Of a stretch of 64,000 nt of DNA, positions 5,405-21,833 are shown in pieces; the stretch's first letter is position 1; the number at the start of each line of letters is the position of its first letter. The stretch is from positions 248,001-312,000 of IMG/VR virus record IMGVR_UViG_3300028920_000001, one strand, 5' to 3'. The position numbers were made by a program, and so were the translations under genes. Under the pieces are notes generated by a model. That model was not told the DNA's origin. It saw only the letters and a list, made by a program, of their open reading frames with translations, and searched no databases.

Positions 5405-5746
5405 ATGAATAATTTAGATATGGTTTGTAGTAAATGCAAAATAGCAGAATGTTGTCCTAAGAAGGGGTCCAGTCCATTAGTTATACCTGGCAAAAAACCA
5501 GAAATGTGCCAGTTAGTTAACGGGTATGGGCGAGATCCGATTTCAGATGATAAATTATCTGAAGAATCTAAACAACTTGTAGATAAACAAGGAAGATGTC
5601 TATCTATTGCTGAAATTCCTGTTTTAGATGAACATACTGGAAAAATCTATCGCGAAATAGTCAAGATCTTTCATCAGCCTATTCTTCATCCACGTGAAAA
5701 AACTAATTGGCAATTAGATATGATATACCCAAGAAGTCATCGATGA
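5405..5746 (+). CDS. Cys-rich hypothetical protein
   Basis: CSKCKIAECC; GTAAAGT-N6-ATG upstream. Confidence 0.6.
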   Translation: MNNLDMVCSKCKIAECCPKKGSSPLVIPGKKPEMCQLVNGYGRDPISDDKLSEESKQLVDKQGRCLSIAEIPVLDEHTGKIYREIVKIFHQPILHPREKTNWQLDMIYPRSHR

Positions 5747-7089
5747 TCACCAATAGTATCAGGTTTCACTGCTCGACACCATTGCATTAATGATGGCCAC
5801 CGGTCTTTTGCTAGTTCATACATTTGATATGCAATTTTACGATATGAAATATGTCCCTGTGGTTGAGTTCGCAATTCTACAATATAATATAATTCCTTAA
5901 GATCCACTTGAAATTGAGATCTATGGAGATAACCCAATGGTATTATATATTGTATTAAATCTGTATCATAAATAACATTTTCATCTATATATTGGGCAGC
6001 TTGAATCATGATTTCATTATATTCATTATTTAATTCAGGATTTTCTGCAATATCCACTGGAGTGCAATATCCATAATTAGTAGATAATGGTTCAATATAT
6101 TGTTCACATCTTCGGTGTCTTTGTAAATCTCTGAATGCGCCATAATCCATCATGATTTCATAAGTGATTTTAATAGTTTTGAATATATCAGGAACTTCAA
6201 ACATGGATGGTCTTTGATTCATGCAATTTTTAAATTCTTCCCAACTCATATAATGCCAAGATGCAACCAAAGATTCAAATGCAGTTTGTTCTAAATCAGG
6301 ATCAGGTAATAAATATGGTCGCGAAATTTTTACATATGGAGATGGATGATCTGCAATGAATTCATCCCCTAATGATCCGAGATTTTTGATTGGAAACTGG
6401 AATTCATTTGGTTCAACATGTTTCATGAGTACAGGGACTACATTTTGTACTGCGGTCAATAATTTTTGTCCAATATGTTGGAATTCTGGATTAGTGTGAC
6501 TTAATAATTCAACAGTTAAATTTCGAATATCCCTGAGGTTTGCGACAGCTGCTAAATTAGTACCGGTTCCAGCAGGTAAAATATATCGAACATTATCAAA
6601 AGCTCGAGCTTTAACTATAGGGTCTTTTAATGTTGCAGGATCATCAGGGTCTTTCTCCATCTTTATAGCACATTCTCTTAATACTTTAGGATATAATCTA
6701 TCATAGGCATCATAAAATCTAGATACAAATTGGAGCATAGATGCAGATGCACCTGGTGGAGTAATGAATGATTCTTTGGAAAATTTTTGATATCTAGTAC
6801 TCTTTTCTGAATATCCGGGTCTTTGGAGTTTTTCAAGAATTTTAGATGCAATAATTGATACCCCTTCAAAGCAAATGGGTAAATTAGCTAATTCTGCTAC
6901 TGAGGAATGATTGTATTTAATTACCCACTTTTCATGAAATTTATCTGCCTCTTCCTTTGATAATTTAGCTAAAATCTCACGAGCTGAAAGAGGCGATCTC
7001 GAATACTTTGCTAGTACAGTTGCTTGTACGGCTGGATCAAGTAATCTACCATCTTGATCGGCCAAACAAAAGATATCAGCTGGAATCAT
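5737..7089 (-). CDS. thyX: Flavin-dependent thymidylate synthase, tandem-domain type
   Basis: HSSVAE, EKSTRY, ARAFDNVRYILP, RDLQRHR, ELRT..QGH motifs; start moved to ATG 7089, which has a GGAG SD. Confidence 0.85.
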   Translation of the reverse strand: MIPADIFCLADQDGRLLDPAVQATVLAKYSRSPLSAREILAKLSKEEADKFHEKWVIKYNHSSVAELANLPICFEGVSIIASKILEKLQRPGYSEKSTRYQKFSKESFITPPGASASMLQFVSRFYDAYDRLYPKVLRECAIKMEKDPDDPATLKDPIVKARAFDNVRYILPAGTGTNLAAVANLRDIRNLTVELLSHTNPEFQHIGQKLLTAVQNVVPVLMKHVEPNEFQFPIKNLGSLGDEFIADHPSPYVKISRPYLLPDPDLEQTAFESLVASWHYMSWEEFKNCMNQRPSMFEVPDIFKTIKITYEIMMDYGAFRDLQRHRRCEQYIEPLSTNYGYCTPVDIAENPELNNEYNEIMIQAAQYIDENVIYDTDLIQYIIPLGYLHRSQFQVDLKELYYIVELRTQPQGHISYRKIAYQMYELAKDRWPSLMQWCRAVKPDTIGDHR

Positions 7090-7099
7090 CGGAGCTCCT

Positions 7100-7738
7100 G
7101 TGGATATGGATGCACAATCCAAACTAAACTTACAGCAAAAAGTTTCTCAAATACAGCATTACTGGTTTGAATCACTGCATAAGCAATCTGCTAGAGTAAG
7201 CCAAGTACGAAGATATGATAAGGGCAAATCTAAGTATATCTTATTTAAAAAACCAATTAAGAAGAATATGCCTGAGGATTTCAGGCCATGGCAGAGTATG
7301 TTATCTCCATCTGCTTTATATAATTGTTCACTTAAATGCCGAAAGGCAATGGGAATCTCTACTCCTGAAGTAAAATGGGTTAGTATTAAAAGATGGGTTA
7401 CTACTACCCCGAGTGGAATTGACTTACCTGAAGGAGTATATTATTCAATCAAACGACACGAAGAATTTGATGCTTCAACAGATCCACCTAAATTCATCAA
7501 AACTCAATATATCTTATTAATGTTTCCTTATGGGAATGTATGGAGTCAAATTGAAAAAAATATACCTATTACTGAGGATTGGATGTTTACTGAACATGAG
7601 AATACGTTAATGCTTGAACATTTAATGCGTAAAGATGCTGCATATCCATTGGACGGATATTTTGGTCGTGTATATGAATATTTAATTAATAATGAAGATC
7701 AAATTGGAATCCATTTAAAGCGAAAGAAAAACAAATAA
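7100..7738 (+). CDS. Hypothetical protein (start uncertain)
   Basis: 212-aa ORF divergent from thyX. Confidence 0.5.
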   Translation: MDMDAQSKLNLQQKVSQIQHYWFESLHKQSARVSQVRRYDKGKSKYILFKKPIKKNMPEDFRPWQSMLSPSALYNCSLKCRKAMGISTPEVKWVSIKRWVTTTPSGIDLPEGVYYSIKRHEEFDASTDPPKFIKTQYILLMFPYGNVWSQIEKNIPITEDWMFTEHENTLMLEHLMRKDAAYPLDGYFGRVYEYLINNEDQIGIHLKRKKNK

Positions 7739-7987
7739 TTATCTAATTTGAATCCATGAGATAGTTTTAAGAATTCTAATTTGTTCTTCTAATTTAAGTC
7801 TAATGTCTTTATCATGACTCTTAGGTAATTTAATTTTTGCCTGTGGGGCTCCATTAGATTCTATTTCAAATTCAATATTTTCAATAAACCCTATTTGTTC
7901 GGTACCAACATAGACGGTGCACCCTCGAGTGCTTATACACACTGTGAGTACACCGTCTCCGAAAACTTTAGGATTATCGAAACTCAC
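7739..7987 (-). CDS. Small hypothetical protein coupled to the purZ-like gene
   Basis: 4-bp ATGA overlap with the stop of 7984..9204. Confidence 0.6.
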   Translation of the reverse strand: MSFDNPKVFGDGVLTVCISTRGCTVYVGTEQIGFIENIEFEIESNGAPQAKIKLPKSHDKDIRLKLEEQIRILKTISWIQIR

Positions 7988-9204
7988 AGCAGGCTGATAA
8001 TATCCTCATGGTCAGCACCGGTTCCGATCAAAACAACCGGTACTTGGGCAATCTCCTCGACTTTATCGATAAATTGACGAGTTTCTGAAGAAAGCTTTTC
8101 TAAAGCCTCTTTTCCGCCACGAATTCCATGGTCTTGCCAATTGAGATACTGAACAAAATTAACTGAAATTTTAGTGACTCCGTTGGTGCGGACCGCATCT
8201 TGTAAGCCAATCCAGGAAAAAGTAGCAACACGACGAATGCGTTTAGTTACTGTCGTTCGTTCACGCTCAGCCAAAATTTTCTTTTCTTCTTCTGGCATTC
8301 CGGCTTGATCAGCTACCTGTTCCCAGGTGAGTTCTTTGCAATCAGGATAAAAATCTCCGGAGTATCCTTTTTGCTTTCCTTCTTCAATCACGTTCCCGAC
8401 TCGGATCGGCACAGTACGGAGATTCATATAGACATCTCCAATCATAGAAGGTGGTATAGCCATATGATCCATAGCTGCCTGTAAGGTGCAATTTCGAGAA
8501 GTGCAATATGGATAATGAGAACCATGATCAATGCTGAGGGCATATCCTTGGCTTCCCTCATGTAGCCAGGTATGCCCTTCGTTTATAATATTGTGAGTTA
8601 AATTACGAAATTCGAAAGCATCTACAACCTTGACTTGTTCACAAAATTCATTAGGCATCCCATCAAGCCACATACTGGTTTCTTCATCAGTATTGATCAA
8701 ATGACGGACAGCATCTAGAACAGGATCACCACCATCACTACTGCTCCTGGCTAGAATAACATCTGGCTTTCGCATGATGCGGTCAGTGATAGCTGCTGCA
8801 GTACCTTGCATAGTCGAAGCCACATGCTTGGTGGAATTGGCGCCAGATTCTTCCCTTTTCTTATGTTCATCTGTAACGATGCTAGTGCGATCATGAATGA
8901 AAATCTTTGGCCTATTTGCTTGATCCCATTCTTTGATCAATTGTTTCCAAAAGAAACCAGAACCGGGCGAGACGAAACACTTAATATCGACGCCCTTAAC
9001 CTTCTTCAAAATAGCGGCAGTAGGCAAAGCCTTGGCTACAAATTTAGTTCCATCTTGGAAAGCAGCTGTATGTCCAGCATTAGGATAGTTTGAAGAAGAA
9101 ACATTTACAATTCCAAACTTATCAGCTAACCAAGCTGAAATTTTTCCTTTTCCACTAGATCCCCATGCCTGATCGATAAGACAATTAAACTTTCCTGTTT
9201 CCAT
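7984..9204 (-). CDS. purZ: Adenylosuccinate synthetase homologue, PurZ type
   Basis: WGSSGKG (Ser where PurA has catalytic Asp), PNAGHT, STMQG, EGSQG, YPYCTSR, PIRVGN, ELTWEQ, TTVTKRIRRV, NFVQYL. Family is clear; PurZ versus PurA is inferred from residues. Confidence 0.75.
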   Translation of the reverse strand: METGKFNCLIDQAWGSSGKGKISAWLADKFGIVNVSSSNYPNAGHTAAFQDGTKFVAKALPTAAILKKVKGVDIKCFVSPGSGFFWKQLIKEWDQANRPKIFIHDRTSIVTDEHKKREESGANSTKHVASTMQGTAAAITDRIMRKPDVILARSSSDGGDPVLDAVRHLINTDEETSMWLDGMPNEFCEQVKVVDAFEFRNLTHNIINEGHTWLHEGSQGYALSIDHGSHYPYCTSRNCTLQAAMDHMAIPPSMIGDVYMNLRTVPIRVGNVIEEGKQKGYSGDFYPDCKELTWEQVADQAGMPEEEKKILAERERTTVTKRIRRVATFSWIGLQDAVRTNGVTKISVNFVQYLNWQDHGIRGGKEALEKLSSETRQFIDKVEEIAQVPVVLIGTGADHEDIISLL

Positions 9205-9250: not shown

Positions 9251-10021
9251 TTATTTGGGCCTGAATGTCTCAGTTTCTACTGAAGAAATTCGAACTCGGT
9301 TTTGTTTTCTAAGAATATTCTTTAAGTCTCGAGCTTCAGCATACTTGGCAATTGAATATTCAGGTTGGTCGGGCTGTCCAAGAGCTACTAATCGAGCCCC
9401 GGCTAATTCTTTTGGAGTATATTTCCTACCTTCAAGTTGAAGTTCTTTACGTCGTTTGACTCGATTAGCCCATCGCATATCAAGCATTCGTCGTACTGCT
9501 TTTTCGCTCACAAATTGAATTCGAATAGTGAGATCAAAGGGAATCTTTCGATATAAGCGTAGACTCATACGGCATGCGTAATCGCATCCCAAGGCAAAAG
9601 CATGTTGATATGAATTAGCTCGGATTAAAACATGTGACAACTTGAATTTTGGTGGAAAAATAGCCCTCCAAATTTTAATTTCAGGCGAAACTTCAGCTCC
9701 TGGACCTAATAACTTTTCCAAAGTCTCGTTTCGATAACCCGGGAAAGCTAAGCTCATGGCTGCATCATAAAGCTGATCAAATCTAGTTTTATTGGCCTTA
9801 TGAGCTGGTATAGGAATTTCTTTTAAAAGATCGAGTGGAATAGTATTATTATGAATAAAATCAACAAACATTGCTCTGAAGTAATCTCGGTCCTTTGGGC
9901 TTGAGGCTCTTTGGATATACTCTTCCAGGCGTTCCTTTGGGCTTCTCTCGCGTTTCCCGGCTTTAAAGGTCTTTTGTCCCGTCTTGGACTTAGAGGCTTT
10001 TTTCATACCTTCTCGTGTCAC
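9251..10021 (-). CDS. Basic hypothetical protein
   Basis: 256-aa K/R-rich ORF. Confidence 0.65.
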   Translation of the reverse strand: MTREGMKKASKSKTGQKTFKAGKRERSPKERLEEYIQRASSPKDRDYFRAMFVDFIHNNTIPLDLLKEIPIPAHKANKTRFDQLYDAAMSLAFPGYRNETLEKLLGPGAEVSPEIKIWRAIFPPKFKLSHVLIRANSYQHAFALGCDYACRMSLRLYRKIPFDLTIRIQFVSEKAVRRMLDMRWANRVKRRKELQLEGRKYTPKELAGARLVALGQPDQPEYSIAKYAEARDLKNILRKQNRVRISSVETETFRPK

Positions 10022-10041
10022 GAACGGGTTATATTTAAATA

Positions 10042-10084
10042 ACAGCCGTGAGAGAACTTTTGTTCAGAAGATCTCTTCGGCTGT
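10042..10084. other. Imperfect stem-loop
   Basis: acagccg..agaga / tctct..cggctgt. Confidence 0.5.
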
Positions 10085-10386
10085 AGAGTTATTTCGCATT
10101 GGATGGAGCGTGGGTATAAATGACAATACGAGTCATCTCCCCAATAAGGTTTAGATTTAACAGGGGTTGGATCATAGATCCGACGAGTCTGAACCTTATC
10201 CGAAAGGCGCGGGCGTCGATCCTAAAGATCGTAAAGAATATGAAGATCTGGATTCAGAGCAACTCCTCTCTGAGCCTAGATTTATTCAGAGTAGCCGAGT
10301 TCGGTTTTACCGTTCGTCGTTGCCCCTCTGTTTAGAGATTTTCTTTTCTCTTCTATTCTTTCTTTCGATCCATTCCTAATGCTCTT

Positions 10387-10776
10387 TTGAAAAAACTCAA
10401 TACCATGTATTCAAATACAGATATAAATTCAACGAGCGAAGCGAGTAAGCAGGAAGCGGAAGCGAAGGAGCATTGGGTACTAGAGGGTGAACATAAGGCG
10501 AGTGAAGGATCAGGTTTAGTCCGGACATTTATGATATTTATAGGGCTTCCGATACATATTGAGTATCAAGTAGCTCCAATGCCGATTTTAAATCCGGGCC
10601 GAGTAATCGATCTTGACCTCTCTTTAAGGCATCCGAAGGATCCGAGAAAGGTTAGGAAGATTCAGGGCCCGCACATAGTCTCGAGTTCTAAGCTCAGATA
10701 TGAATCGGACGGAAGACCTTCAAGAAAGGGTCTTTCTCAATATCTGGAAATGAAAATCTTCGAGCTTGCCACGTAA
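10387..10776 (+). CDS. Hypothetical protein (true start probably downstream)
   Basis: C-terminal ~70 aa looks protein-like; the 5' part crosses a GAAGC-repeat tract. Confidence 0.4.
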   Translation: MKKLNTMYSNTDINSTSEASKQEAEAKEHWVLEGEHKASEGSGLVRTFMIFIGLPIHIEYQVAPMPILNPGRVIDLDLSLRHPKDPRKVRKIQGPHIVSSSKLRYESDGRPSRKGLSQYLEMKIFELAT

Positions 10777-10876
10777 GCTCGGGCATGTTATTATCCAGAT
10801 TGTCTGGTGCCGTAAATACTCGGCGCGGCTCTGTAACTCCGTTAAGTCGACGAACCGGTCGTCGCAGGGAGGAAAG

Positions 10877-12265
10877 ATGAAACGCGTAAAAGTTATTATT
10901 CCGACGAACCAGTCATTTTTAAGAGACTGGTATTCGTGGACCCATGGCCGTGTGTCTCGTCACTTCAAGCGGAACAAGGAACGGGTAATTGATACCGCAC
11001 AGAACGTGCGGTTACGTCTCCTCAGCAAAGATTTCATCGGCAGGTGGTTTTTTAAACATCTGACTGAGGACTTAATCACTCGAGAACAAGCTGAGAAAAT
11101 TCTCGGTGGTATTCGAATTGCGTTTGCTGGTTCTATCCATCCGGTGGTGGGTGATCGGTCTGATCCGGAGTCTTTATGGCGCGTATCAGATATTTTGCAG
11201 TTTGCTAAATTTGATTACGATCGTTATTATTACTCAATTCAAAATCACACGATCGATAGTGATCGGATGATCCGCCTACTCGGTTATCCGGAAAAGTCGT
11301 ATGGCTTGTTACAATCATTGTATCGCCAAGGTCGAATTCGTCCTGCTGAATTTACTGAGCATGATTGCACAGGGAAAAAAGATTGTGTATCATGTGATCG
11401 AGGCCGAGCTCGTTTGCGTGGTAAAGGGATTTCTTTAGCTCATAACTGGCTAGATCCGAAAGTTGAATGTCACGTCAGCGCTTTACGTTGGAATGATTCT
11501 CAATTATCCCCATTTTTGCGTAATTGGAAGCGGATGAACTGGATCAAGTGTACTCCCGATTTCATCATGCGTCCTGAAGGCAAAAAGACGGCAACTATTA
11601 CTGCTGGCCTACTCAAGTATGCAGCTATTATTATTGATAATGAAGTTGTCAATGATTTTAAGCGGATGGGTCGCGTTGATGATTTGTCGAACGTGATTCT
11701 GAATAATGGTATGTCTCCTGAGCTTTCTAATAATGAAACTGTTGCTTATGAAGTAGATGAAAAAACTGAGGAAACAAAAGCTGTTCTATGTGATCCTCAG
11801 GCCAATGAGACTTTTGAAGAGTCTGATCGCCGTAGTGATATTACTGCACTGATCAATAGCTCAAATTTGACTGATGAGGAGTATGAAGTCATTTTGAGAA
11901 TTGATCTGCAAAATATGTCGGTTCGTGCTTTTAGTGAGGAGTATGAAATTCAGATTCAGAAAATTCACCGAATTCGAAATTCTGCACTTCGTAAAATGCG
12001 GGGGTCGAAATTAGATGAAGAGGGGATTAAGAATCTGGTCAGATCAATTTGTTTGGGTCATTCAATGACAATTGAGCAAATTTTGTCTCCGGAGCCGTTT
12101 GGCCCGTCGGTCGTTGCTCGGACTGATTTGTTTTCTACTCTTTACGATCATGGAATGAATATTGAGGCTATTTCTGGCTATTTCTTATACCCTCAACCTA
12201 AAATTGTGGCAGCCATTAATCGTAAATGTAATCAGGAAATGCGGGTTCGTAAGCCGAAGGGCTAG
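10877..12265 (+). CDS. Sigma-70/ECF-like factor with large region-2 insertion and C-terminal DnaA-domain-IV-like HTH
   Basis: GGAGG SD before ATG 10877; region-2-like segments (VIDTAQNVRLRLL; LLKYAAIIIDNEVVNDFKR); region 4 LTDEEYEVILRIDLQNMSVRAFSEEYEIQIQKIHRIRNSALRKMR. Confidence 0.65.
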   Translation: MKRVKVIIPTNQSFLRDWYSWTHGRVSRHFKRNKERVIDTAQNVRLRLLSKDFIGRWFFKHLTEDLITREQAEKILGGIRIAFAGSIHPVVGDRSDPESLWRVSDILQFAKFDYDRYYYSIQNHTIDSDRMIRLLGYPEKSYGLLQSLYRQGRIRPAEFTEHDCTGKKDCVSCDRGRARLRGKGISLAHNWLDPKVECHVSALRWNDSQLSPFLRNWKRMNWIKCTPDFIMRPEGKKTATITAGLLKYAAIIIDNEVVNDFKRMGRVDDLSNVILNNGMSPELSNNETVAYEVDEKTEETKAVLCDPQANETFEESDRRSDITALINSSNLTDEEYEVILRIDLQNMSVRAFSEEYEIQIQKIHRIRNSALRKMRGSKLDEEGIKNLVRSICLGHSMTIEQILSPEPFGPSVVARTDLFSTLYDHGMNIEAISGYFLYPQPKIVAAINRKCNQEMRVRKPKG

Positions 12266-12280
12266 ATTTTTATTCTATGA

Positions 12281-13711
12281 GTGGTCATGATGGCCACTCA
12301 AGTACACCTTGCCTCTTCAACTCGTTTGATCCTGGCTATGTTTCAACTTATAGCTGCGATTGAAGATAATTTCGGTAGGGCCTTATTTGATATTTTATCT
12401 AAGCAATATCCGGATCAAGTTGATGATATGGTAGCCAAGTTGTCCGGTTTTCCCGCAGAACAAATTGAAGCGGAGCCGGCAACTGCTAAAAGGGCTGCTT
12501 TTCGTCGACTTGGAAATCGGATGTTAGCAATAGCCCGTCGTGAGCTTCAGCATTCGCCAGATGAGGCGATTGATGTTGTTCAAGATTTTCTTACTTATAT
12601 TGCAACTGGATCAAAGACAGTTGAGGATCCTGAAACTGGTGAAAGGACTGAACGAACTGAAGCGGAGCCATGGGATTTTACCAAGGCTGATGAAAATTGG
12701 CAGGGAGCTTTAAAAAAGATTTTCCGTAATATTAAAACTACTGGGATTAGCCGATCTCAAAAGATTACTGGGATTCGTGATTCTGATAAACGTGAATTTG
12801 GAATGCTGAAATGGAAGATGGAACAAGGTGAAGAACTTGACGCACGTGAGAAGGCTGAATATAAGAAATTAGAGAAACTATTTAAGTCTAAGAAAGTTGA
12901 TCCTGATTCAATTCCGGCGTGGGATCCTGATAAGCCTTGGGGAGCTAAGGAAAAGGGGATTGAAGAAGCCTTCGGTAAGCGTGGTGAAGAAGGTGAAGAA
13001 AAGTCTGGTGGTGAAGGAGCCATTCCGACCACTGATGAAACTGCACTTGGTAAAGCTCTCGATGACAAAGCCGCTGTTCGTGAATTTATCGATTTAATTG
13101 ATCTTCATCTCCCGGATCTTAAGTCATCATTATCTGAAGATACCAGTAAGTTATTTGATTTAATTTTTGAAGATGAAATTGGTTCATTTGGTTCTGACAT
13201 TAAAGAAAATATGGGTCAAGCTTCAGCTCTTAAAGAAAAATATCCGGAACTTTATGAAGCTAATAAGAAGCGCTGGTCTGGATTTGTTGGTGATTTGCGT
13301 AAAAAGTTATTGAAAGAAATTTTCAAATATATAGATACTGAGATGTCGAAGCGTGATTATGAGCGCCTATATGAAGAATTTTTCGCGGACACGACTCCTC
13401 GAGATGTCGAAAAGAGGGAAGAGGCTAAAGTTAAAGAGAAAGAATCCTATCAACGTGGGATTGATGAACGCAAATTAGGTCGTCTTAAGTACAAAAAGGA
13501 TCAGAGTGGTAAGCTTTCCGATCGAGAGCAAAAAGAATGGGATCGTTTGGTTAAGAAACTTAATTTGTCTGAAGAAGAAATTGGAAGAATTGAAGCTGTT
13601 TCGCCTAAATCGAAGAAAGGTCCTGCAGCTGAAGCCATGGCATCTCTTAGCCCAATGGCTCGTAGATTAGCCATTAATTGGTTAATTGACCATGGATGGT
13701 TCACTATATAA
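12281..13711 (+). CDS. Divergent sigma-factor-like protein, possibly virion-associated
   Basis: RMLAIARRELQHSPDEAIDVVQDFLTYI resembles ECF region 2; LSEDTSKLFDLIF...DLRKKLLKEI is region-4-like. Confidence 0.5.
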   Translation: MVMMATQVHLASSTRLILAMFQLIAAIEDNFGRALFDILSKQYPDQVDDMVAKLSGFPAEQIEAEPATAKRAAFRRLGNRMLAIARRELQHSPDEAIDVVQDFLTYIATGSKTVEDPETGERTERTEAEPWDFTKADENWQGALKKIFRNIKTTGISRSQKITGIRDSDKREFGMLKWKMEQGEELDAREKAEYKKLEKLFKSKKVDPDSIPAWDPDKPWGAKEKGIEEAFGKRGEEGEEKSGGEGAIPTTDETALGKALDDKAAVREFIDLIDLHLPDLKSSLSEDTSKLFDLIFEDEIGSFGSDIKENMGQASALKEKYPELYEANKKRWSGFVGDLRKKLLKEIFKYIDTEMSKRDYERLYEEFFADTTPRDVEKREEAKVKEKESYQRGIDERKLGRLKYKKDQSGKLSDREQKEWDRLVKKLNLSEEEIGRIEAVSPKSKKGPAAEAMASLSPMARRLAINWLIDHGWFTI

Positions 13712-14052: not shown

Positions 14053-14253
14053 ATGACTAAGAAGAAGGATCCGGGACCAATCGTTTTAGTTCCGTGTAAG
14101 CGTGGAAGAGATCAAAAGACTGCCGGGACCAGTTGTTCTAGTAAAAAAGCATATAAATTAAGTGAAGACGGGGCTAAGCTTGTGAGGTTTAAGTGCGTTG
14201 AATGTGGACACACTTGGACTATTCCGGTTGGTGGCCAATTCACTGCTGTTTGA
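14053..14253 (+). CDS. Zinc-ribbon protein
   Basis: C..C..FKCVECGHTW. Confidence 0.65.
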   Translation: MTKKKDPGPIVLVPCKRGRDQKTAGTSCSSKKAYKLSEDGAKLVRFKCVECGHTWTIPVGGQFTAV

Positions 14254-14454: not shown

Positions 14455-15255
14455 ATGAATTGTGGAGTTGTAGGAAACATTAATGCAGTTCGTACTTTCC
14501 AAAATTTCTTTAGTAGAGAATTTAGAGTCCTAGTTTTAAATGGTCCTTCTTATATTGGGAAGTGGACTTTTGCTAGAAATTGGTTGATTGAACAAGTACA
14601 GGCTGCTGATTTTTTTGAGCCAGATACTTCAATTTCCGGAGCTCGTGAAGTAAAGGCGTTTTTTGAAACTGAACCGTTATTTAGTTCATGGAAAGTAGCC
14701 TTAATTAATGACGCTGATCGACTAAGTGAACCGGCGCAAGATGTTTATCTCAAGATTTTGGAAGAACCGCCATCTAAAGCTCGAATTGTCTTCATTACTG
14801 AAGATTGTGATGCTCTTTTGTCTGCGTTGAAATCTAGACTTCAGCATATTATCCGATGGCATATGCTTTATGGTGGTGAGATGGATGAATTCATTGAGTC
14901 TAGTGAATTCACTGAAGATAAAGAGGCTCGACGTCTTTGTGCAGGTCGTCCTGGTTTGTATAATTTCTTAGCTGGAAAATGTGAACCTTATTCTCAGCTT
15001 TACACAGCTGTAGAACAATCTATTGGTGGTGAATCCTCTTTATTTATGCCTATTCCTGAGATTATTTTGAATCTGAAAAATAAGCGTTCGATTGAGAAAG
15101 ATGCAGCAGCTCAAATAATAAGATCAGCAGCTAAACAAAAATTATCTAAGAATAATCGGAAAGTGTCGAAATTTTATGAATTTGCAGCTATTTTACTTAG
15201 ACAACCATCAGCTAGTGCAGAAATTCATTGGCAAAAAGCTATCTTAGATCTTTGA
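14455..15255 (+). CDS. holB: Clamp-loader delta-prime-like subunit
   Basis: GPSYIGK, INDADRLSEPAQDVYLKILEEPP, ALKSRL. Confidence 0.85.
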   Translation: MNCGVVGNINAVRTFQNFFSREFRVLVLNGPSYIGKWTFARNWLIEQVQAADFFEPDTSISGAREVKAFFETEPLFSSWKVALINDADRLSEPAQDVYLKILEEPPSKARIVFITEDCDALLSALKSRLQHIIRWHMLYGGEMDEFIESSEFTEDKEARRLCAGRPGLYNFLAGKCEPYSQLYTAVEQSIGGESSLFMPIPEIILNLKNKRSIEKDAAAQIIRSAAKQKLSKNNRKVSKFYEFAAILLRQPSASAEIHWQKAILDL

Positions 15256-15270
15256 ATGTAATTTTTTGTC

Positions 15271-16197
15271 TTGGCTAATTTAGTTATCATAAACGGGGAT
15301 GATGAATTCCTCAAAGAACGTGCTGCTTTAGATGAAGCGCATAATTTTTTAACGAATGATATAGACTGGTTTGATTATTCCAATCTTGATCGTTATCTAG
15401 ATGAATCTCAAATGGTTCCGTTGTCGGGGGAAGGTCGAATATTTATCATCCGAAATTCGAAAAAAGTACCAGAACTCCCATGTGGTGAAAATGATGTACT
15501 CATTCTAATATCGCATTCTCAGCTTACCGATGGTAGAGCTAAACGAATACATAGTATAAAGGCGCTGAAAACTTTCGATAATAACAATGAAATCATTAAA
15601 TGGATTTTAGTTGAGGGTAGACGATCTAATATCGATTTATCTAGAGTCGCTGGTGCTTTATATATCAATAATGGAAAACGCTTAAGGAAAATTCATTCTG
15701 AAATCCAAAAATTAATAGCATTAACTGAACCCGGTGATATTGTTTCTCCTGAAGTTGCTAGATCAGTGTTATGTTTTTCTGCTGATCTCACACCTAAACA
15801 AGTAGTGGATGCAATGATTGATGGTAATGCTAGATTAGCACTAGGTTATTACGATAAGCTACAAGAAAAAGCGGATGAGACTGGATGGATCATATCATAT
15901 ATGCAATTTCATGTGCTTCAACAACTAAGAATGGAAGAATTACATCGGAAAGGAGTGGAACATAACGATTCGGCAGCTAAACTTAGTGTTCACCCGTTTG
16001 TATACAAAAAGATGTTAGAAAAACGTTTGGGACTGTGGACTTCAGAGTCTTTATTAAACAGTGTTTCTGCGCTCTGTGATCTCGATCTCGAACATAAGCG
16101 TGGCAACAAAGCAGCTCGATTAGGGTTGGAAGCAGAAATTATTAGACTGTCTGAGGAGTCAGGGAATGTCCAAAGAGTCAGTGGCACGAAAAACTGA
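15271..16197 (+). CDS. holA: Clamp-loader delta-like subunit
   Basis: IINGDDEFL, IHSEIQKL, LSVHPFVYKK, LCDLDLEHKRG..RLGLE. Confidence 0.8.
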   Translation: MANLVIINGDDEFLKERAALDEAHNFLTNDIDWFDYSNLDRYLDESQMVPLSGEGRIFIIRNSKKVPELPCGENDVLILISHSQLTDGRAKRIHSIKALKTFDNNNEIIKWILVEGRRSNIDLSRVAGALYINNGKRLRKIHSEIQKLIALTEPGDIVSPEVARSVLCFSADLTPKQVVDAMIDGNARLALGYYDKLQEKADETGWIISYMQFHVLQQLRMEELHRKGVEHNDSAAKLSVHPFVYKKMLEKRLGLWTSESLLNSVSALCDLDLEHKRGNKAARLGLEAEIIRLSEESGNVQRVSGTKN

Positions 16198-18955
16198 TAT
16201 CGAATCTCCTGGTGTCGCGACCTTAGAAAAAGTAGTGGGGATGCCGAAAGCCGGCAAAGAAGCTGGTACTTGGGAGCGTGTTTTTACTGTAGAAGGTGTA
16301 CATCCATTTGATGAAATAGAATGGAAGACAATAAATGCTAAAATCGTAGCTGAAAATGGTGAAATTAAATACGAGCAAAAAGATGTTGAATTTCCAATTT
16401 GGTGGCATCAGACCAATATTAATGTAGTAGCTAGTAAATATTTTCGTATTATTGATGGAGTTAAAGAAAATTCACTTAAACAAATTATAACTCGAGTAGC
16501 TAACGTTATTACGGATTGGGCTACTGAGCAAGAATACTTTAACACAGAGAATGACGCTAATATTTACAAGCAAGAATTAATTTATGCTTTGGTTCATCAA
16601 TATGGAGCTTTCAATTCTCCAGTATGGTTTAACTTAGGAGTACCTGGTCGTCGTCAAACAGCTAGTGCTTGTTTTATTCAAGGAATTTATGACTCATTAG
16701 ACTCAATACAGACTTTTCAACGTTCTGAACTTAGTATTTTTGCTAGTGGTTCTGGATCAGGTGCTAATTTTAGTGATCTTCGTTCTTCATATGAGAAGCT
16801 TTCATCTGGTGCATATGTGTCTGGTCCAATTGCATGGATGCGTCCTTTAGATCAGGCAGCTGGTGCTATGAAGTCAGGAGGATCCACCCGAAATGCGGCT
16901 AAAATGGTCGTTATGGATATGGATCATCCTGATATCATGGAAACGTTAGACGGTCGTCCAGGTTTCATTCGATGCAAGGCCGTTGAAGAGCAGCGAGCTC
17001 ATGACCTAATTGAGATGGGATATGGAACAGCTTATGATGATCCAAATTCTGCGTACAAGAATGTGATGTATCAGAATGCGAATCATTCGGTGAGTGTGCC
17101 TGATAATTTTATGAAGTCTGTTGAGTCCGATGGACAATGGGAGACTAAAGAACGATTAACTAATGAAACGGTTCATACTTATAAAGCTCGTGATTTATGG
17201 GATGAAATTGCTAAAGCAGCTTGGAAATGTGGAGACCCTGGAGTTCAATTTACTGATACTATCAATAACTGGCATACTACGCCGAAATCTGGGAAAATTC
17301 GTTCGAGTAATCCATGTAGTGAATTCTTACATGTTGACAATACGGCATGTAATTTATGTGGTCTAAATCTTAGCAAGTTTTTTCTTAATGGAGCTCCACT
17401 CGATGTTAAAGCTTTTGAACATGCAGTTCGTATTTTCGTGACTGCACAAAATGCTTTTGTGAATAAGGCTGAATATCCTACACCTGAGATTACTAAGAAC
17501 TCCCATATGCTGAGGCCAATTGGTCTTAATTATGGTGATTTGGGCGCCGTTATCATGAAGCTTGGGTACGCCTATGATTCAGATGAAGGACGTGCAGTAG
17601 CAGCACGTTTAGCTAGTTTGATGACAGGCTATGCTTATCTGTATTCATCTAAATTGGCCGCCCGTACTCAGGTATTTCCTGAGTATGAACGTAATAAGCA
17701 AGATATGTTGCGAGTCATGCGCATGCATCAGAAAGCTGATGCTGACATTTTGAATCGTTGGAACTTATCAGAAGATCCATTATCTGTTAGTGATAAATCA
17801 CAATCAGTTTGGGAACGAGTTAATGCTATTGGCGAGCGTCACGGATTCGCTAATTCTCAGACTACACTTCAAGCTCCGCTTGGCACGATTTCATTTCTCA
17901 TGGGAATGGATACTACCGGTATTGAACCAGCATTTTCGTTGGTATCATATAAATCACTTGTCGGTGGTGGCTTTGAAAAATTAGTTAATCACGCGGTAGA
18001 ACAAGCACTGCTGATGCTTGAGTATTCTGATGATCAAATCACGGAAATTAGGGATTATATTAATCAAAATGATTATATAGAAAAAGCTCCACATCTAAAA
18101 GAAGATCATTTATCAGTATTTGATTGTGCAGCTAACACAGGTCCATCAAAACGTCACATTTCAGCGATGGGTCATCTTAAGATGATGGCTGCCATTCAGC
18201 CACTCATTACCTGTGCTATGAGTAAGACAGTTAATTTACCAGAAGAAACAACTCCGGAGCAAATTGCTGAAACGTATATGGATAGTTGGAAGCTCGGTCT
18301 CAAGTGTGTGGCTCTTTATCGCAATGGGTCAAAGAAATCACAACCTTTGTCGAGTAAAAAAAATAATTTCAAAGAAGAAAGACCTTCAGGAATTCAAGAA
18401 GTAATTAAAGAGATTATTAAAGAGGTCCCTGCACCACGTCGAAAGCTGCCGGAGAATATCTCTGCTAAGCGGCATAAGTTTGTGATTGATGGTTCTAAGG
18501 GTTATTTAATTATGGGTGAATATGAGGATGGAACCTTAGGTGAAATCTTCATCCGATTCGGTAAGAACGGTTCTACGTTAAATGGTCTTATGGATGCGAA
18601 TACGCAATTAGCTAGTATTGCATTACAGCATGGTGTTCCACTTGAGAAGTTGATTCGTGCATTTATTAATACTAAGTTTGAGCCGGCTGGGTTTACTCAG
18701 AATCCCGACATCAGGTTTGCTACAAGTTTACTTGATTATGTTTTCAAATATCTTGATATCAGATACTGTGGTGGTCGAGTTTCAGGTTTAGATGCTCGTC
18801 TCTCCGATCAAGATCATGATATTTCTCATCCGAGTTCTGATCGTCCTAGTATGACGCCAGATGCTCCACCTTGTGTTCATTGCGGTTCTATTACTCGCCG
18901 GAATGGTTCTTGCTATTTATGTGAGACTTGTGGTAACACTTCGGGTTGTAGTTGA
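16166..18955 (+). CDS. nrdJ: Class II (B12-dependent) ribonucleotide reductase with C-terminal TSCPD/Zn domain
   Basis: FNSPVWFN, SACFI, TRNAAKM, SNPCSE, APLGTIS, SKTVNLP, CETCGNTSGCS. Confidence 0.95.
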   Translation: MSKESVARKTDIESPGVATLEKVVGMPKAGKEAGTWERVFTVEGVHPFDEIEWKTINAKIVAENGEIKYEQKDVEFPIWWHQTNINVVASKYFRIIDGVKENSLKQIITRVANVITDWATEQEYFNTENDANIYKQELIYALVHQYGAFNSPVWFNLGVPGRRQTASACFIQGIYDSLDSIQTFQRSELSIFASGSGSGANFSDLRSSYEKLSSGAYVSGPIAWMRPLDQAAGAMKSGGSTRNAAKMVVMDMDHPDIMETLDGRPGFIRCKAVEEQRAHDLIEMGYGTAYDDPNSAYKNVMYQNANHSVSVPDNFMKSVESDGQWETKERLTNETVHTYKARDLWDEIAKAAWKCGDPGVQFTDTINNWHTTPKSGKIRSSNPCSEFLHVDNTACNLCGLNLSKFFLNGAPLDVKAFEHAVRIFVTAQNAFVNKAEYPTPEITKNSHMLRPIGLNYGDLGAVIMKLGYAYDSDEGRAVAARLASLMTGYAYLYSSKLAARTQVFPEYERNKQDMLRVMRMHQKADADILNRWNLSEDPLSVSDKSQSVWERVNAIGERHGFANSQTTLQAPLGTISFLMGMDTTGIEPAFSLVSYKSLVGGGFEKLVNHAVEQALLMLEYSDDQITEIRDYINQNDYIEKAPHLKEDHLSVFDCAANTGPSKRHISAMGHLKMMAAIQPLITCAMSKTVNLPEETTPEQIAETYMDSWKLGLKCVALYRNGSKKSQPLSSKKNNFKEERPSGIQEVIKEIIKEVPAPRRKLPENISAKRHKFVIDGSKGYLIMGEYEDGTLGEIFIRFGKNGSTLNGLMDANTQLASIALQHGVPLEKLIRAFINTKFEPAGFTQNPDIRFATSLLDYVFKYLDIRYCGGRVSGLDARLSDQDHDISHPSSDRPSMTPDAPPCVHCGSITRRNGSCYLCETCGNTSGCS

Positions 18956-19248: not shown

Positions 19249-20049
19249 TTGAATATGGGTAAAGAGAATTACTCCAGAATTCTTGAATTATATAAATCTG
19301 GATTATCTAAAAGAGAAATAAGAGAACAAGGATTTGGTTGGAATGAAGTAAAGAAAGCTTTGATTGGGAATACTAGGAGTCTCAAAGAAGTTGGCCGAAT
19401 TTATTCTGATAGGTATTTAGAAAAGAACACCCATGAATTGAATAAAAATCAACTTGATTTGATTTACGGGTCCTTACTCGGTGATTCAAGTTTGAGCAGG
19501 TATTCATATACTTTAATGTTTTCAAATACCCATTGTGACGCTCAATATGATTATTCTTTACATATGAAGAAAATATTACCTAGTGGGAATATTTATTCTA
19601 GGATTCAAAAGAGCGGATATAAAATCGGTGTACCAGTTCATTTCTTTTCATATCGAAATAAAGGAGCATTGATAAAAATATGGGATGTTGTGATGATTAA
19701 TAATAAGAAGACAGTGAATAAAAATTGGGTGGAGAGGATCAATAAAGAAGCTCTAGCTTATTGGTTTATGGATGATGGAACATCTTGTTATACTAAGCGT
19801 GAAACTGGCGTGTCTGTCACAATTCAATTTTCTACCTATTCTTTTTCATATTGTGAAAATTGTTTATTGAAGGAAAAACTGGAAGATTTTGGTATACGAT
19901 CTAATGTAAGGAATACTAAAAATGGTCATGTACTGGGGGTATCTAAACTGGATTCTGATAAACTGATTGAATTAATAAAGCCTACAATTGAAAAAGTTCC
20001 ATGCATGCAGTACAAACTCAAATTTACTAAACGTAAACCCCTTTTGTAA
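19249..20049 (+). mobile_element. Free-standing double-motif LAGLIDADG homing endonuclease with N-terminal HTH
   Basis: LIYGSLLGDSS and ALAYWFMDDG motifs; no intein ends. Confidence 0.85.
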
Positions 20050-21154
20050 GATTTCCTTCGCAGTACGGTATTACGTCATTCTTACGAGAAATGAGAACTT
20101 CGTCTCCTCTCGAGAGTTGAAGTTGGTTGAATATTTTAATATTATGGAGTGACACGTGAGTGATAGTTACTCCGCCAATGTGAACTGGTTCTAAGACAGC
20201 TACACCTGTGATACGTCCTGTAGGTCCAACCTGCCATTTAATATCTTTAATATTGGTGGTTCCCATTGCCGGATCAAATTTCCAAGCAATTTGTCCTCGA
20301 GGGCGCATATTGAGCTCACCGATTTCTTCTTGAGCCGGAATATTGTTGAGTCTGATTACGGTGCCGTCGATTTCGTATGGAATTTGATCTCTATTTTCAT
20401 GAATTCGGTGATGCCATTCAATCACTTTGTCTTGATCACCAACTAAATAAGGTGGGATCTCAAATTTCATTTTCTTTAAGACTTTAAATCGCTTTTCTTC
20501 TGAATCGGGTGCAGTTTCAGATATTAAGGTAAAGGCTACGAAGATTAGGTTTTTACAATCAGCTCCTTTATTTTTCTTATCCCTAACTTTGCCGGCTGCT
20601 GTATTTCGTGGATTTGCGTATTGATTCGAATAATATTGTTCAAAAGTTTTTTTGAGCATCATAATTTCACCGCGTACATGGATCCGTTCGCTAGTGATTG
20701 GGACAGACTTAGGGAGATTGGGAATTTGAATAATATTATATGTAACGTCTTCTCCTATTTTTCCATCTCCTCTAGTAACACCGCGAACTAAATTTCCTTT
20801 ATCATAAATTACTTCTAAGCTTGAACCATCTAATTTATAGGTAATTAACAATTCTTCAGGCTTAGTTTCACCATTTACTTCATTTTCAAGATCTACCACC
20901 CATTCAACGAAATCTTCTACTTCGTTGACCTTATTGAGGGATCCCATCGGGATTTCGTGTTGGATCTTCTCCCAAATTGAATGGGCTGAGGGAGTTGCCC
21001 CGATAGTAGTGACTTCAAAATCCTGTGGGGCTAATTGTCTGAGTTTATCAATTTTAGCATCATATTCTTGATCGGATAAAGTTGGAGTGAGATTATAATA
21101 GGCTTCTCGAGCTTCTTTCAGTTCTTTCTGGAGTTTTTTAATTTCTGAATCCAT
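20027..21154 (-). CDS. ligA: NAD-dependent DNA ligase, N-terminal part (Ia, adenylation, OB domains)
   Basis: YYN..P..SDQEYD, KLDG, TRGDG..GEDVT, VRGE, NPRNTAAG, EIDG, AWKF, NDVIP; start moved to ATG 21154 (GTATCTT-N5-ATG). Confidence 0.92.
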   Translation of the reverse strand: MDSEIKKLQKELKEAREAYYNLTPTLSDQEYDAKIDKLRQLAPQDFEVTTIGATPSAHSIWEKIQHEIPMGSLNKVNEVEDFVEWVVDLENEVNGETKPEELLITYKLDGSSLEVIYDKGNLVRGVTRGDGKIGEDVTYNIIQIPNLPKSVPITSERIHVRGEIMMLKKTFEQYYSNQYANPRNTAAGKVRDKKNKGADCKNLIFVAFTLISETAPDSEEKRFKVLKKMKFEIPPYLVGDQDKVIEWHHRIHENRDQIPYEIDGTVIRLNNIPAQEEIGELNMRPRGQIAWKFDPAMGTTNIKDIKWQVGPTGRITGVAVLEPVHIGGVTITHVSLHNIKIFNQLQLSRGDEVLISRKNDVIPYCEGNLTKGVYV

Positions 21155-21187
21155 ATCTAAAGATACATTGGTCAATAGGCCTTTGGT

Positions 21188-21814: not shown

Positions 21815-21833
21815 TACATTGTAAATTCAATGT

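What the first reader, a model, noticed from the sequence alone, without database searches (positions are those of the whole stretch)
10877..12265. Sigma factor with ~200-aa insertion in region 2 and a fused DnaA-like DNA-binding domain
Seen: region 2.1-2.2-like and 2.3-2.4-like segments are separated by about 200 aa that include HDC..KDCVSC. A clear region 4 is followed by MTIEQILS..SVVARTDLFSTLYDHGMNIEAISGYF..KIVAAINR, which resembles DnaA domain IV. Inference: a sigma with its own sequence-specific binding module, possibly linking transcription to the adjacent candidate origin.
Basis: inference. Interest (0 to 1): 0.65.

Follow-up and report, generated by a model that had tools for sequence, protein, structure and literature searches.

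The report
Huge-phage sigma factor with inserted domains
A 427-kb phage from marine sediment encodes a transcription initiation (sigma) factor whose promoter-melting loop is replaced by a 190-residue zinc-binding DNA-binding-type module and which carries an extra DnaA-like tail; it is an unusual variant of a known kind of protein, not a link to a replication origin.

Summary
ORF 10877-12265 (462 aa, GGAGG before the ATG) belongs to a full-length-conserved family found only on huge-phage contigs.

AlphaFold models (pLDDT 88 and 93) and structure searches give this layout:
- a sigma-2 core split into aa 1-53 and 244-266;
- a ~190-aa basic insert (aa 54-243) with an invariant H-C-C-C motif and MerR/HTH_17-like winged helices;
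- an acidic linker;
- a clear sigma-4 (aa 306-378);
- a C-terminal domain (aa 382-458) whose best structural match is DnaA domain IV (Z 10.2).

A co-fold of the N-domain with E. coli beta' clamp helices passed its controls (0.74 against 0.42) and uses the invariant D39 and Q42. By my manual alignment, the insert sits where ECF sigmas have the 8-residue "specificity loop" that reads the -10 element.

An exhaustive profile search found the insert only in this family. The DnaA-like tail keeps none of the six DnaA-box-reading residues and was lost several times within the family.

There is no DnaA-box cluster or iteron set next door. The "candidate origin" holds a conserved small ORF and a covarying hairpin instead.

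Verdict: a phage sigma factor and a new variant of a known kind. SigmaHetZ is a precedent for promoter-reading inserts. The origin link is unsupported.

The parts
10877..12265 (+). Whole gene: 462-aa sigma-like protein (P0001)
   Evidence: ORF and translation; GGAGG at 10868-10872; 194 full-length homologues; AF2 model with pLDDT 87.9
10877..11035 (+). Sigma-2 N-part (aa 1-53): region 2.1/2.2-like helices with invariant D39, Q42, R47, K51; strongly basic
   Evidence: VIA matches to sigma-2 domains. Predicted contact of residues 12-19 and 38-50 with beta' 274-298. Conservation; charge
11036..11605 (+). Insert (aa 54-243) at the position of the ECF specificity loop: invariant GRWF motif, degenerate plus complete MerR/HTH_17-like winged-helix units, net basic
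   Evidence: About 185 residues are skipped in the sigma-2 structural alignments. Matches to TniQ, BldC and a 55-residue chain of a viral DNA-packaging entry (7lxs_A) over aa 120-222. ESM Atlas nearest shapes are MerR/HTH_17 proteins. The insert profile finds only this family among 1.84 billion representatives
11360..11395 (+). Probable zinc site H162-x-C164-x5-C170-x2-C173
   Evidence: H and C conserved in 137-138 of 138 complete members. About 40 members carry a second nested Cys/His finger between C164 and C170. Metal binding is inferred, not shown
11606..11674 (+). Sigma-2 C-part (aa 244-266): long region 2.3/2.4-like helix, GLLKYA...N..VVNDFK, with invariant Y248, N259, F261, K262
   Evidence: Closes the sigma-2 bundle in the model; conservation; my manual alignment to E. 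coli sigmaE (sequence)
11675..11791 (+). Acidic, partly disordered sigma-2/sigma-4 linker (aa 267-305)
   Evidence: pLDDT below 50 at aa 269-284; median net charge -7
11792..12010 (+). Sigma-4 domain (aa 306-378)
   Evidence: VIA Z 8-9.3 to many sigma-4 structures. Pfam Sigma70_r4 in 44 of 52 members, best E 3.4e-9; weak in P0001 itself, E 0.088
12020..12250 (+). C-terminal DnaA-domain-IV-like helix-turn-helix domain (aa 382-458)
   Evidence: 1j1v_A Z 10.2, 3pvp_A Z 9.7, 8btg_A Z 9.4, 1l8q_A Z 9.2. Phage 'DnaA C-terminal' proteins in BFVD, TM by target up to 0.84. Pfam Bac_DnaA_C in 3 of 52 members, best E 5.5e-4
10766..10794 (+). Sigma-70-type promoter-like site TTGCCA-17-TATTAT with TG, 83 nt before the ATG
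   Evidence: Consensus scan, 10 of 12 matches; the total number of sites in the region is not above shuffles
10812..10836 (+). Variant (GTAAAT-N14-TGTAA) of a genome-wide promoter-like motif, 40 nt before the ATG
   Evidence: Regex scan of the genome; not conserved upstream of the gene in relatives
12281..13711 (+). Conserved downstream 476-aa highly charged protein, always the next gene; possible partner
   Evidence: Homologue directly downstream in 18 of 19 related loci; no family match

Best explanation
The gene encodes a phage alternative sigma factor of the sigma-70 superfamily with the two-domain, ECF-like plan (sigma-2, linker, sigma-4). The phage has no recognisable RNA polymerase of its own, so the protein most likely docks on the host core enzyme. 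Its region 2.2 helix would bind the beta' clamp helices and its sigma-4 the beta flap, redirecting the host enzyme to a class of phage promoters. Two features are unusual. First, the short specificity loop that ordinary sigmas use to capture the flipped -10 base is replaced by a ~190-aa basic module with a zinc knuckle and MerR/Xis-type winged helices. I infer that this module takes over recognition or opening of the -10 region, as the inserted domains of sigmaHetZ do. Second, most members carry a C-terminal DnaA-domain-IV-like helix-turn-helix after sigma-4. I infer that it adds a DNA contact upstream of -35, or a contact with another protein, and that it is dispensable. Predicted, not measured: domain folds, family conservation, the beta' contact and synteny. 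Inferred: host-polymerase use, the promoter-reading role of the insert and the role of the tail.
For: Folds: the top VIA hits of the N-domain are almost all sigma-2 domains (5uxx_C and 8z6g_B Z 5.5; seven of the top eight rows are sigma-2 domains, the other being TniQ on the insert). Sigma-4 reaches Z up to 9.3. Whole-model Foldseek hits are sigma factors and DnaA DNA-binding domains. Sequence: Sigma70_r4 in 44 of 52 members; language-model neighbours are ECF/sigma-70 clusters; some members are labelled sigma24 by JGI. Core binding: the co-fold with E. coli beta' 250-320 scored ipSAE 0.74 against a best control of 0.42. That mark was reached by 58 of 80 solved complexes and 2 of 110 mismatched pairs. 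The three runs agree in at least 95% of contacts and the partner pLDDT is at least 72. The interface uses residues 12-19 and 38-50, including invariant D39 and Q42, against beta' 274-298. No RNAP beta or beta' Pfam domains were found in the 427-kb genome, which carries three other sigma-like genes. Insert position: F53 and Y248 align by hand with the residues flanking the specificity loop of sigmaH/sigmaE (PMC6411747). Precedent: sigmaHetZ is an ECF sigma whose inserted domains recognise and unwind the -10 region (PMC13342950).
Against: Sigma-2 is not detectable by sequence. Pfam Sigma70_r2 hit only 2 of 52 members, at E 0.057 or worse. hhalign against sigmaE and an HMM of the joined core against the phage's own sigmas found nothing. 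Foldseek gave no significant hit for the N-domain. VIA Z of about 5.5 is in the range where helical bundles can match by arrangement alone. The co-fold used E. coli beta', not the unknown host's. One control scored 0.42, and a pass for a family with solved complexes may reflect likeness only. No promoter class could be tied to this protein, and no RNA data exist. Highly divergent phiKZ-type polymerases might escape the two Pfam models.
Confidence: 0.72

Rival explanations
1. Origin-linked factor. The DnaA-like tail binds repeated sites in the neighbouring intergenic region, and the sigma part brings RNA polymerase there, so that transcription activates or primes phage replication.
For: The gene heads a conserved replication and nucleotide-metabolism block: clamp-loader subunits, class II RNR, ligase, RecD2-like helicase. 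The steep rise of cumulative GC skew starts at this gene. A conserved structured non-coding element lies 500-800 nt upstream.
Against: No DnaA boxes or iterons in 10022-10876. All six DnaA-box-reading residues are replaced. The tail is missing in 14 of 138 members and was lost at least 5 times, while the synteny stays the same in loci without it (L024, L029). The global skew minimum lies about 68 kb away, at about 190 kb. In most relatives another ~1-kb gene separates the element from the sigma gene.
Confidence: 0.08
2. Sigma mimic used for host takeover. The protein occupies the sigma-binding sites of host RNA polymerase, or binds DNA, without itself directing initiation, shutting off host transcription or tethering the polymerase.
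For: The predicted beta' clamp-helix contact says nothing about initiation. The canonical specificity loop is gone. The sigma-4 domain is mildly acidic.
Against: Both sigma domains, their order and the acidic linker are kept across the whole family. So are the region 2.3/2.4-like residues Y248, N259, F261 and K262, which a mere blocker would not need. Phages without their own polymerase commonly use their own sigma factors (PMC7824862).
Confidence: 0.1
3. Stand-alone multi-HTH DNA-binding regulator (repressor or activator) that only resembles sigma in fold and does not bind core polymerase.
For: The protein has up to four helix-turn-helix-type modules. Sigma-2 is invisible to sequence methods.
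Against: The top structural neighbours are consistently sigma-2, not generic helical bundles. The co-fold with beta' passed its controls through invariant residues.
Confidence: 0.07

Closest known systems
ECF (group 4) sigma factors such as E. coli sigmaE and M. tuberculosis sigmaH
   Same: Two-domain plan (sigma-2, linker, sigma-4). A D..Q motif in the region 2.2 helix is predicted to sit on the beta' clamp helices. The sigma-4 helix-turn-helix is present. These are the best structural neighbours.
   Different: The 8-residue specificity loop (sigmaH 72-79, PMC6411747) is replaced by about 190 residues. There is an extra C-terminal domain. No Pfam Sigma70_r2 signal. The protein is 462 aa, against roughly 190 aa for an ordinary ECF sigma.
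SigmaHetZ of Anabaena (PMC13342950)
   Same: An ECF-type sigma with added domains. In HetZ these recognise and unwind the -10 region instead of the specificity loop, and a domain after sigma-4 touches DNA and the beta subunit. This is the working analogy for mechanism.
   Different: HetZ's additions lie before sigma-2, between sigma-2 and region 3.2, and after sigma-4. Here the addition is inside sigma-2. Homology of the inserts was not tested because no HetZ sequence was at hand. HetZ is cellular, not viral.
DnaA domain IV and the small phage proteins annotated 'DnaA C-terminal'
   Same: The fold of aa 382-458 (Z 10.2 to 1j1v_A; TM by target up to 0.84 to phage proteins of 76-200 aa). The A-R pair at the start of the third helix and an Arg at the end of the recognition helix align with DnaA A404-R405 and R442.
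   Different: No AAA+ domain. None of the six DnaA-box-reading residues is kept. The basic loop is replaced by a P/E/G-rich stretch. Only 3 of 52 members reach E below 1 with Pfam Bac_DnaA_C.
MerR / HTH_17 (Xis-like) winged-helix DNA-binding domains, including BldC and TniQ's C-terminal part
   Same: Shape of the insert, aa ~120-222. By eye, the sequence pattern T-I-D-x-D-x-h-x-x-L-L-G-Y...RQGR-h-x-P resembles HTH_17.
   Different: No Pfam hit. A zinc knuckle is inserted in the wing. The module is embedded inside another domain.
T4 late transcription set gp55/gp33/gp45
   Same: A phage sigma-like protein used with host polymerase. T4 gp55 appears among the structural neighbours (7d7d_F, Z 4.4). 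The gene here sits beside clamp-loader genes.
   Different: gp55 lacks sigma-4. No gp33 or clamp link was tested here. The resemblance is a lead only.

Membership tests
Sigma-70 superfamily, ECF-like | Sigma-2 helical bundle | tested here: met
   The N-domain model (pLDDT 93.4, pTM 0.84) has sigma-2 domains as nearly all its top VIA hits (Z 5.0-5.5, 69-84 residues, rmsd 2.0-3.9). The Z values are moderate and Foldseek was blank.
Sigma-70 superfamily, ECF-like | Region 2.2 contact with the beta' clamp helices | tested here: met
   Co-fold score 0.74 against a best control of 0.42. The interface is residues 38-50 (D39, Q42) with beta' 274-298. This is a prediction only, made with E. coli beta'.
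Sigma-70 superfamily, ECF-like | Sequence signature of region 2 (Pfam Sigma70_r2) | tested here: not met
   Only 2 of 52 members match, best E 0.057. hhalign and HMM tests were blank.
Sigma-70 superfamily, ECF-like | Sigma-4 helix-turn-helix domain | tested here: met
   VIA Z up to 9.3. Sigma70_r4 in 44 of 52 members, best E 3.4e-9.
Sigma-70 superfamily, ECF-like | Short specificity loop that reads the flipped -10 base | tested here: not met
   About 190 residues lie between the residues that flank the loop (F53 and G244-Y248, by manual alignment).
Sigma-70 superfamily, ECF-like | Forms a holoenzyme and directs promoter-specific initiation | not testable with these tools
   Needs biochemistry. 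No RNA runs hold this DNA.
DnaA | AAA+ ATPase domain III | tested here: not met
   No such domain in the model or in the Pfam scans.
DnaA | Domain IV fold | tested here: met
   1j1v_A Z 10.2, rmsd 2.1, 77 of 94 residues.
DnaA | DnaA-box-reading residues R399, P423, D433, H434, T435, H439 | tested here: not met
   In the hhalign register, extended ungapped by hand past D433, they correspond to P407, E430, Q440, P441, K442 and A446. The residue list is from PMC7561715.
DnaA | Pfam Bac_DnaA_C above its cut-off | tested here: not met
   No hit for P0001 and none in the genome. Three of 52 members hit at E 5.5e-4 or weaker.
MerR/HTH_17 winged helix (for the insert) | Fold and sequence profile | tested here: inconclusive
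   Shape neighbours have TM by target of 0.36-0.55 and VIA Z of 3.5-5.0. No Pfam hit.
SigmaHetZ-type sigma | Homologous insertion domains i1, i2, i3 | not tested
Judging from the paper's text, the domain order differs.

The most novel reading that the evidence does not exclude
The zinc/winged-helix module that replaces the specificity loop is a new way of reading or opening the -10 region. One possibility is that it is adapted to the phage's own DNA: a PurZ-like gene two genes away hints at 2-aminoadenine DNA, which is harder to melt and would not fit the adenine pocket of ordinary sigmas. Another is that, together with the neighbouring clamp loader, it couples late transcription to replication. 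Either way the family would be a sigma class with a different promoter-opening mechanism.
Probability: 0.12. Interest if true: 0.8.

Novelty: new variant of a known kind. Interest (0 to 1): 0.55.

Why it matters
All well-studied sigma-70-type factors, except the recently described sigmaHetZ, open promoters with the sigma-2 domain and its short specificity loop. This family appears to have that loop replaced by a conserved 190-residue DNA-binding-type module. That would be a second, independent case of added domains replacing the core promoter-reading device, this time in viruses. It could show how huge phages without their own polymerase reprogram the host enzyme. The family is compact (about 30 clusters at 50% identity) and predicted with high confidence. 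The domains are separable, so binding, transcription and structural tests are straightforward.

Tried and rejected
- Phage database searches by DNA and protein found nothing.
- The sequence profile against PDB gave only weak region 4 hits.
- The TALE-repeat "hits" of the C-terminal profile are a repeat artefact: each repeat scores about 3 bits with i-Evalue above 400.
- The N-domain profile against PDB found nothing.
- hhalign of the family against E. coli sigmaE did not align sigma-2. It aligned the C-terminal HTH with sigmaE region 4.2, at probability 4%.
- An HMM of the sigma-2 core with the insert columns removed found no other sigma in the genome.
- Foldseek on the N-domain found nothing significant.
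- A word search with the C-terminal domain alone found one fragment of a close relative.
- There are no paralogues in the genome.
- The conserved ATGACAATA is not a gene start: the ORFs behind it run from 5 to 99 aa and are unrelated.
- K-mer enrichment in intergenic regions mostly recovered tRNA T-arms.
- The downstream 476-aa protein shows no relation to the sigma family, and its Atlas neighbours are uninformative.
- Rfam found no match in 9900-11000.
- No RNA sequencing run holds this DNA.
- A first maximum-likelihood tree did not finish, so FastTree was used instead.
Full report
**Setting.** The window is bases 248001-312000 of a 426,960-bp virus record with direct terminal repeats. The only run that holds it fully is a marine sediment metagenome.

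The genes around the finding are phage replication and nucleotide-metabolism genes:
- a ThyX-like gene at 5737-7122 (-);
- a PurZ-type adenylosuccinate synthetase at 7984-9204 (-), phrog_1211, E 7.6e-58;
- two DNA polymerase III clamp-loader-type subunits at 14455-16197;
- a class II ribonucleotide reductase at 16166-18955;
- a ligase and a RecD2-like helicase.

Table 11 was used throughout. Nothing suggested another code.

**The observation.** ORF 10877-12265 starts at an ATG preceded by GGAGG at 10868-10872 and gives 462 aa (P0001). A word search found 194 relatives, nearly all full-length at 38-96% identity, on contigs of up to 436 kb. Some are labelled sigma24 by JGI or carry Pfam Sigma70_r4. 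A 52-sequence alignment has 47 invariant columns spread over the N-terminal 335 residues plus A414. The gene is real and under selection along its whole length.

**Domain anatomy.** AlphaFold2 with this alignment gave mean pLDDT 87.9 for the whole protein, and pLDDT 93.4 with pTM 0.84 for residues 1-272 alone.

An alignment of the full model to about 48,000 PDB representatives gave two clear results:
- DnaA domain IV was the best match, on residues 382-458: 1j1v_A Z 10.2, rmsd 2.1, 77 residues. 3pvp_A, 8btg_A and 1l8q_A also matched, at Z 9.2-9.7.
- A long list of sigma region 4 structures matched residues 306-378, at Z 8-9.3.

For the N-domain model, seven of the top eight rows, and most of the top 30, are sigma-2 domains of ECF and other sigma factors (Z 5.0-5.5). 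Each aligns only 69-84 residues spread over model positions 6 to about 270. The sigma-2 bundle is therefore built from the two ends of the N-domain, and about 185 residues are looped out.

These Z values are moderate, and Foldseek found nothing significant for this domain. The assignment rests on the consistency of the list, on the sigma-4 that follows in the right order after an acidic, partly disordered linker, and on the co-fold below.

Sequence methods see only region 4. Pfam Sigma70_r4 hits 44 of 52 members (best E 3.4e-9), whereas Sigma70_r2 hits only 2 of 52, at E 0.057 or worse. Profile tests against E. coli sigmaE and the phage's own sigmas were blank for sigma-2. Language-model neighbours of the protein are ECF/sigma-70 clusters.

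**Core binding.** I co-folded residues 1-272 with E. coli beta' 250-320, the clamp helices:
- The score was 0.74 against a best control of 0.42.
- That mark was reached by 58 of 80 solved complexes and 2 of 110 mismatched pairs. These counts hold only roughly here, because my own alignment was used.
- The three runs agree in at least 95% of contacts, and the partner pLDDT is at least 72.
- The interface is residues 12-19 and 38-50 of the phage protein against beta' 274-298.

The interface includes D39 and Q42, which are D or E in all 138, and Q in all 138, complete family members. This matches the D..Q motif of region 2.2, through which sigma factors sit on the beta' coiled coil (PMC6411747).

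A pass here may partly reflect the model's memory of solved sigma-beta' complexes. It supports likeness, not binding in a cell. The host is unknown.

**Where the insert sits.** I aligned P0001 by hand to sigmaE (sequence). DTAQNVRLRLLSKDF (aa 39-53) pairs with DVVQEAFIKAYRALDSF, and GLLKYAAIIIDNEVVNDF (aa 244-261) pairs with AFYTWLYRIAVNTAKNYL.

F53 and Y248 then correspond to the residues that flank the specificity loop. In sigmaH this loop is residues 72-79, between F72 and W81, and it forms the pocket for the flipped -10 base (PMC6411747). The insert (aa 54-243) therefore replaces that loop. This register is my inference. The tools gave ranges, not residue pairs.

**What the insert is.** It opens with an invariant R56-W57-F58. 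It is basic in its second half (median net charge +9). It holds H162, C164, C170 and C173, conserved in 137-138 of 138 members. About 40 members have a second Cys/His finger nested between C164 and C170.

Structural neighbours of aa ~120-222 are TniQ (7u5d_I, Z 5.0), a 55-residue chain of a viral DNA-packaging entry (7lxs_A) and BldC. The nearest ESM Atlas shapes are MerR and HTH_17 proteins, with TM by target up to 0.55. By eye, aa 124-160 follow the HTH_17 pattern and aa 65-112 look like a degenerate copy.

An exhaustive HMMER search of 1.84 billion representatives with the insert profile found 37 proteins. Every one has the same order: sigma-2 N-part, insert, sigma-2 C-part, sigma-4, or is a fragment of that. 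The insert therefore has no detectable relative outside this family.

**The C-terminal domain.** Besides the PDB matches, many small phage proteins annotated "DnaA C-terminal" match it in BFVD, with TM by target up to 0.84 and rmsd 1.5-2.5. The fold is common in phages as a stand-alone protein. Three of 52 members hit Pfam Bac_DnaA_C (best E 5.5e-4).

hhalign against E. coli DnaA 370-467 gives the expected register at low probability (21%, P 0.0011). It covers DnaA up to D433, so I extended it ungapped by hand for the rest. In that register the six residues that read the DnaA box (PMC7561715) map as follows:

| E. coli DnaA | P0001 |
|---|---|
| R399 | P407 |
| P423 | E430 |
| D433 | Q440 |
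| H434 | P441 |
| T435 | K442 |
| H439 | A446 |

None is kept. The conserved positions are G409, V412, A414, R415, F419, L422, G426, R/K442 and R449. This fits a helix-turn-helix with some other specificity, or a protein-binding role.

The domain is absent from 14 of 138 complete members and from 3 of 19 IMG/VR loci, with no separate copy nearby. On a FastTree of the core region its absence needs 9 changes, at least 5 of them forced by well-supported branches (midpoint root for drawing only; all 138 rows kept). Some absences may be assembly artefacts. Even so, the domain is modular and dispensable.

**Context and the origin idea.** Across 16-19 related huge-phage loci, and in two more distant contigs, the gene order is conserved:
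1. PurZ-like (-)
2. a 256-aa protein (-)
3. a 300-450-bp divergent spacer
4. a small ORF (window 10387-10776; its last ~85 aa are conserved)
5. the sigma gene
6. a highly charged protein (476 aa in the window)
7. a ~119-aa protein
8. a 66-aa TFIIS-type zinc ribbon
9. the clamp-loader subunits

In most relatives an extra ~1-kb stretch separates the small ORF from the sigma gene.

The spacer has no iterons. DnaA boxes occur at chance frequency in the window (7 found, 6.7 expected), and none lies in 10022-10876. Cumulative GC skew has its minimum near 190 kb, is flat to about 258 kb, and rises steeply from the sigma gene onward. That also marks the start of a long block of rightward genes.

What the spacer does contain is a conserved structured element. 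It has the motifs CTGTAGAGT and ATGACAATA. It also has a hairpin at 10288-10330 whose outer and inner stems covary: 7 of 10 pairs show double changes, 87% of cells are paired against 68% in shuffles, and the covariation score is 0.583 against 0.225, matched by 0 of 500 shuffles. The alignment was fitted to the structure, which favours it. The hairpin is followed by a second small hairpin and a pyrimidine tract. The element is single-copy in the genome, is found at the same place in 11 related loci, and has no Rfam match.

This looks more like an RNA leader, small RNA or terminator than an origin, though a DNA-level role cannot be excluded.

**How the gene may be expressed.** A sigma-70-like site (TTGCCA-17-TATTAT with TG) lies at 10766-10794. 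A variant of a genome-wide motif, GTAAAT-N14-TGTAT, lies at 10812-10836. That motif has at least 9 intergenic copies just before genes; from base composition alone I estimate about 0.2 by chance. The genes behind the motif are mostly of unknown function, and the motif is not kept before the sigma gene in relatives. The sigma gene is packed head-to-tail with the replication genes downstream, so it is probably co-transcribed with them.

**Does the phage need it?** No Pfam core domains of multisubunit RNA polymerase were found in the genome. The genome has three other sigma-like genes: a 396-aa RpoD-like one, a 219-aa ECF-like one, and a 261-aa protein with two region 4 domains. Jumbo phages without their own polymerase typically carry sigma factors to redirect the host enzyme (PMC7824862).

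**Comparison with known systems.** The closest kind is the ECF sigma factor. The closest precedent for the oddity is sigmaHetZ. It is an ECF-type sigma with three added domains that recognise and unwind the -10 region in place of the specificity loop, plus a post-sigma-4 domain that touches DNA and beta (PMC13342950). The placement differs here, because the insert lies inside sigma-2, and homology was not tested. I found no paper in the held library describing a sigma fused to a DnaA-domain-IV-like domain. That is a limited search, not proof of absence.

**Verdict.** The functional link to an origin is not supported. The protein is best read as a phage sigma factor of a new architectural variant. 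I put the sigma role at about 0.7 and the specific role of the insert lower.

Noticed in passing
window 10083-10375 (+), hairpin 10288-10330: Conserved structured non-coding element in the divergent spacer upstream of the small ORF and sigma gene. It has motifs CTGTAGAGT and ATGACAATA, a hairpin with covarying stems around conserved GTAGCC...GTTGCCCC, a second small hairpin and a pyrimidine tract. Present in the window and 11 related loci, single-copy in the genome, no Rfam match.
   Followed up: partly
window 7984-9204 (-): PurZ-type adenylosuccinate synthetase (phrog_1211, E 7.6e-58; GSSGKG instead of PurA's GDEGKG). It hints at 2-aminoadenine DNA in a 427-kb phage. The genome has no MazG-family gene and only one weak HD-domain hit far away, so the usual Z-cluster is incomplete.
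   Followed up: partly
window 34361-35146 (+): A 261-aa protein with two tandem sigma region 4 domains and no region 2 (Pfam Sigma70_r4 E 2.6e-14, two stretches). Possibly a minimal or gp33-like factor.
   Followed up: no
window 14053-14253 (+): A 66-aa protein matching the TFIIS zinc ribbon (E 1.6e-4, just above the Pfam cut-off). It is conserved in all 19 related loci between the sigma gene and the clamp loader.
   Followed up: no
window 12281-13711 (+): A 476-aa highly charged protein with no family match. It is the gene immediately after the sigma gene in 18 of 19 loci, so it is a candidate partner or regulator.
   Followed up: partly
window 10387-10776 (+): Small ORF whose last ~85 aa are conserved in 15 related loci.
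   Followed up: partly
G000:C1 sites ending at 130143, 149688, 163059, 169660, 175031, 184956 and 310296 (all - strand; the last is window 62296), among others; window 10812-10836 (+): Promoter-like motif GTAAAT-N14-TGTAT, 9-22 nt (some up to about 100 nt) before start codons, at 9 or more intergenic sites; I estimate about 0.2 by chance. The genes behind it are mostly of unknown function.
   Followed up: partly
G000:C1 near 12877 (+), 45967 (-), 67898 (-), 195125 (+), 376390 (+): A ~32-nt repeat, AATGCYATTCAGACGGCACAAAGATCTGAAC, with an internal TTCAGA/TCTGAA palindrome, at five intergenic sites, plus a degenerate copy in a coding region.
   Followed up: no
window 19249-22628: The NAD-dependent DNA ligase appears to be in pieces. 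The adenylation and OB domains lie on the - strand (20027-21214), the HhH and BRCT domains on the + strand (21834-22628), and a LAGLIDADG endonuclease gene sits beside them (19249-20049).
   Followed up: no
Family members P0045, P0074, P0081, P0090, P0121 and others: About 40 of 138 family members carry a second Cys/His finger (C..C..KHYxxGYCxxHY) nested inside the zinc loop of the insert. Two members have it twice.
   Followed up: no
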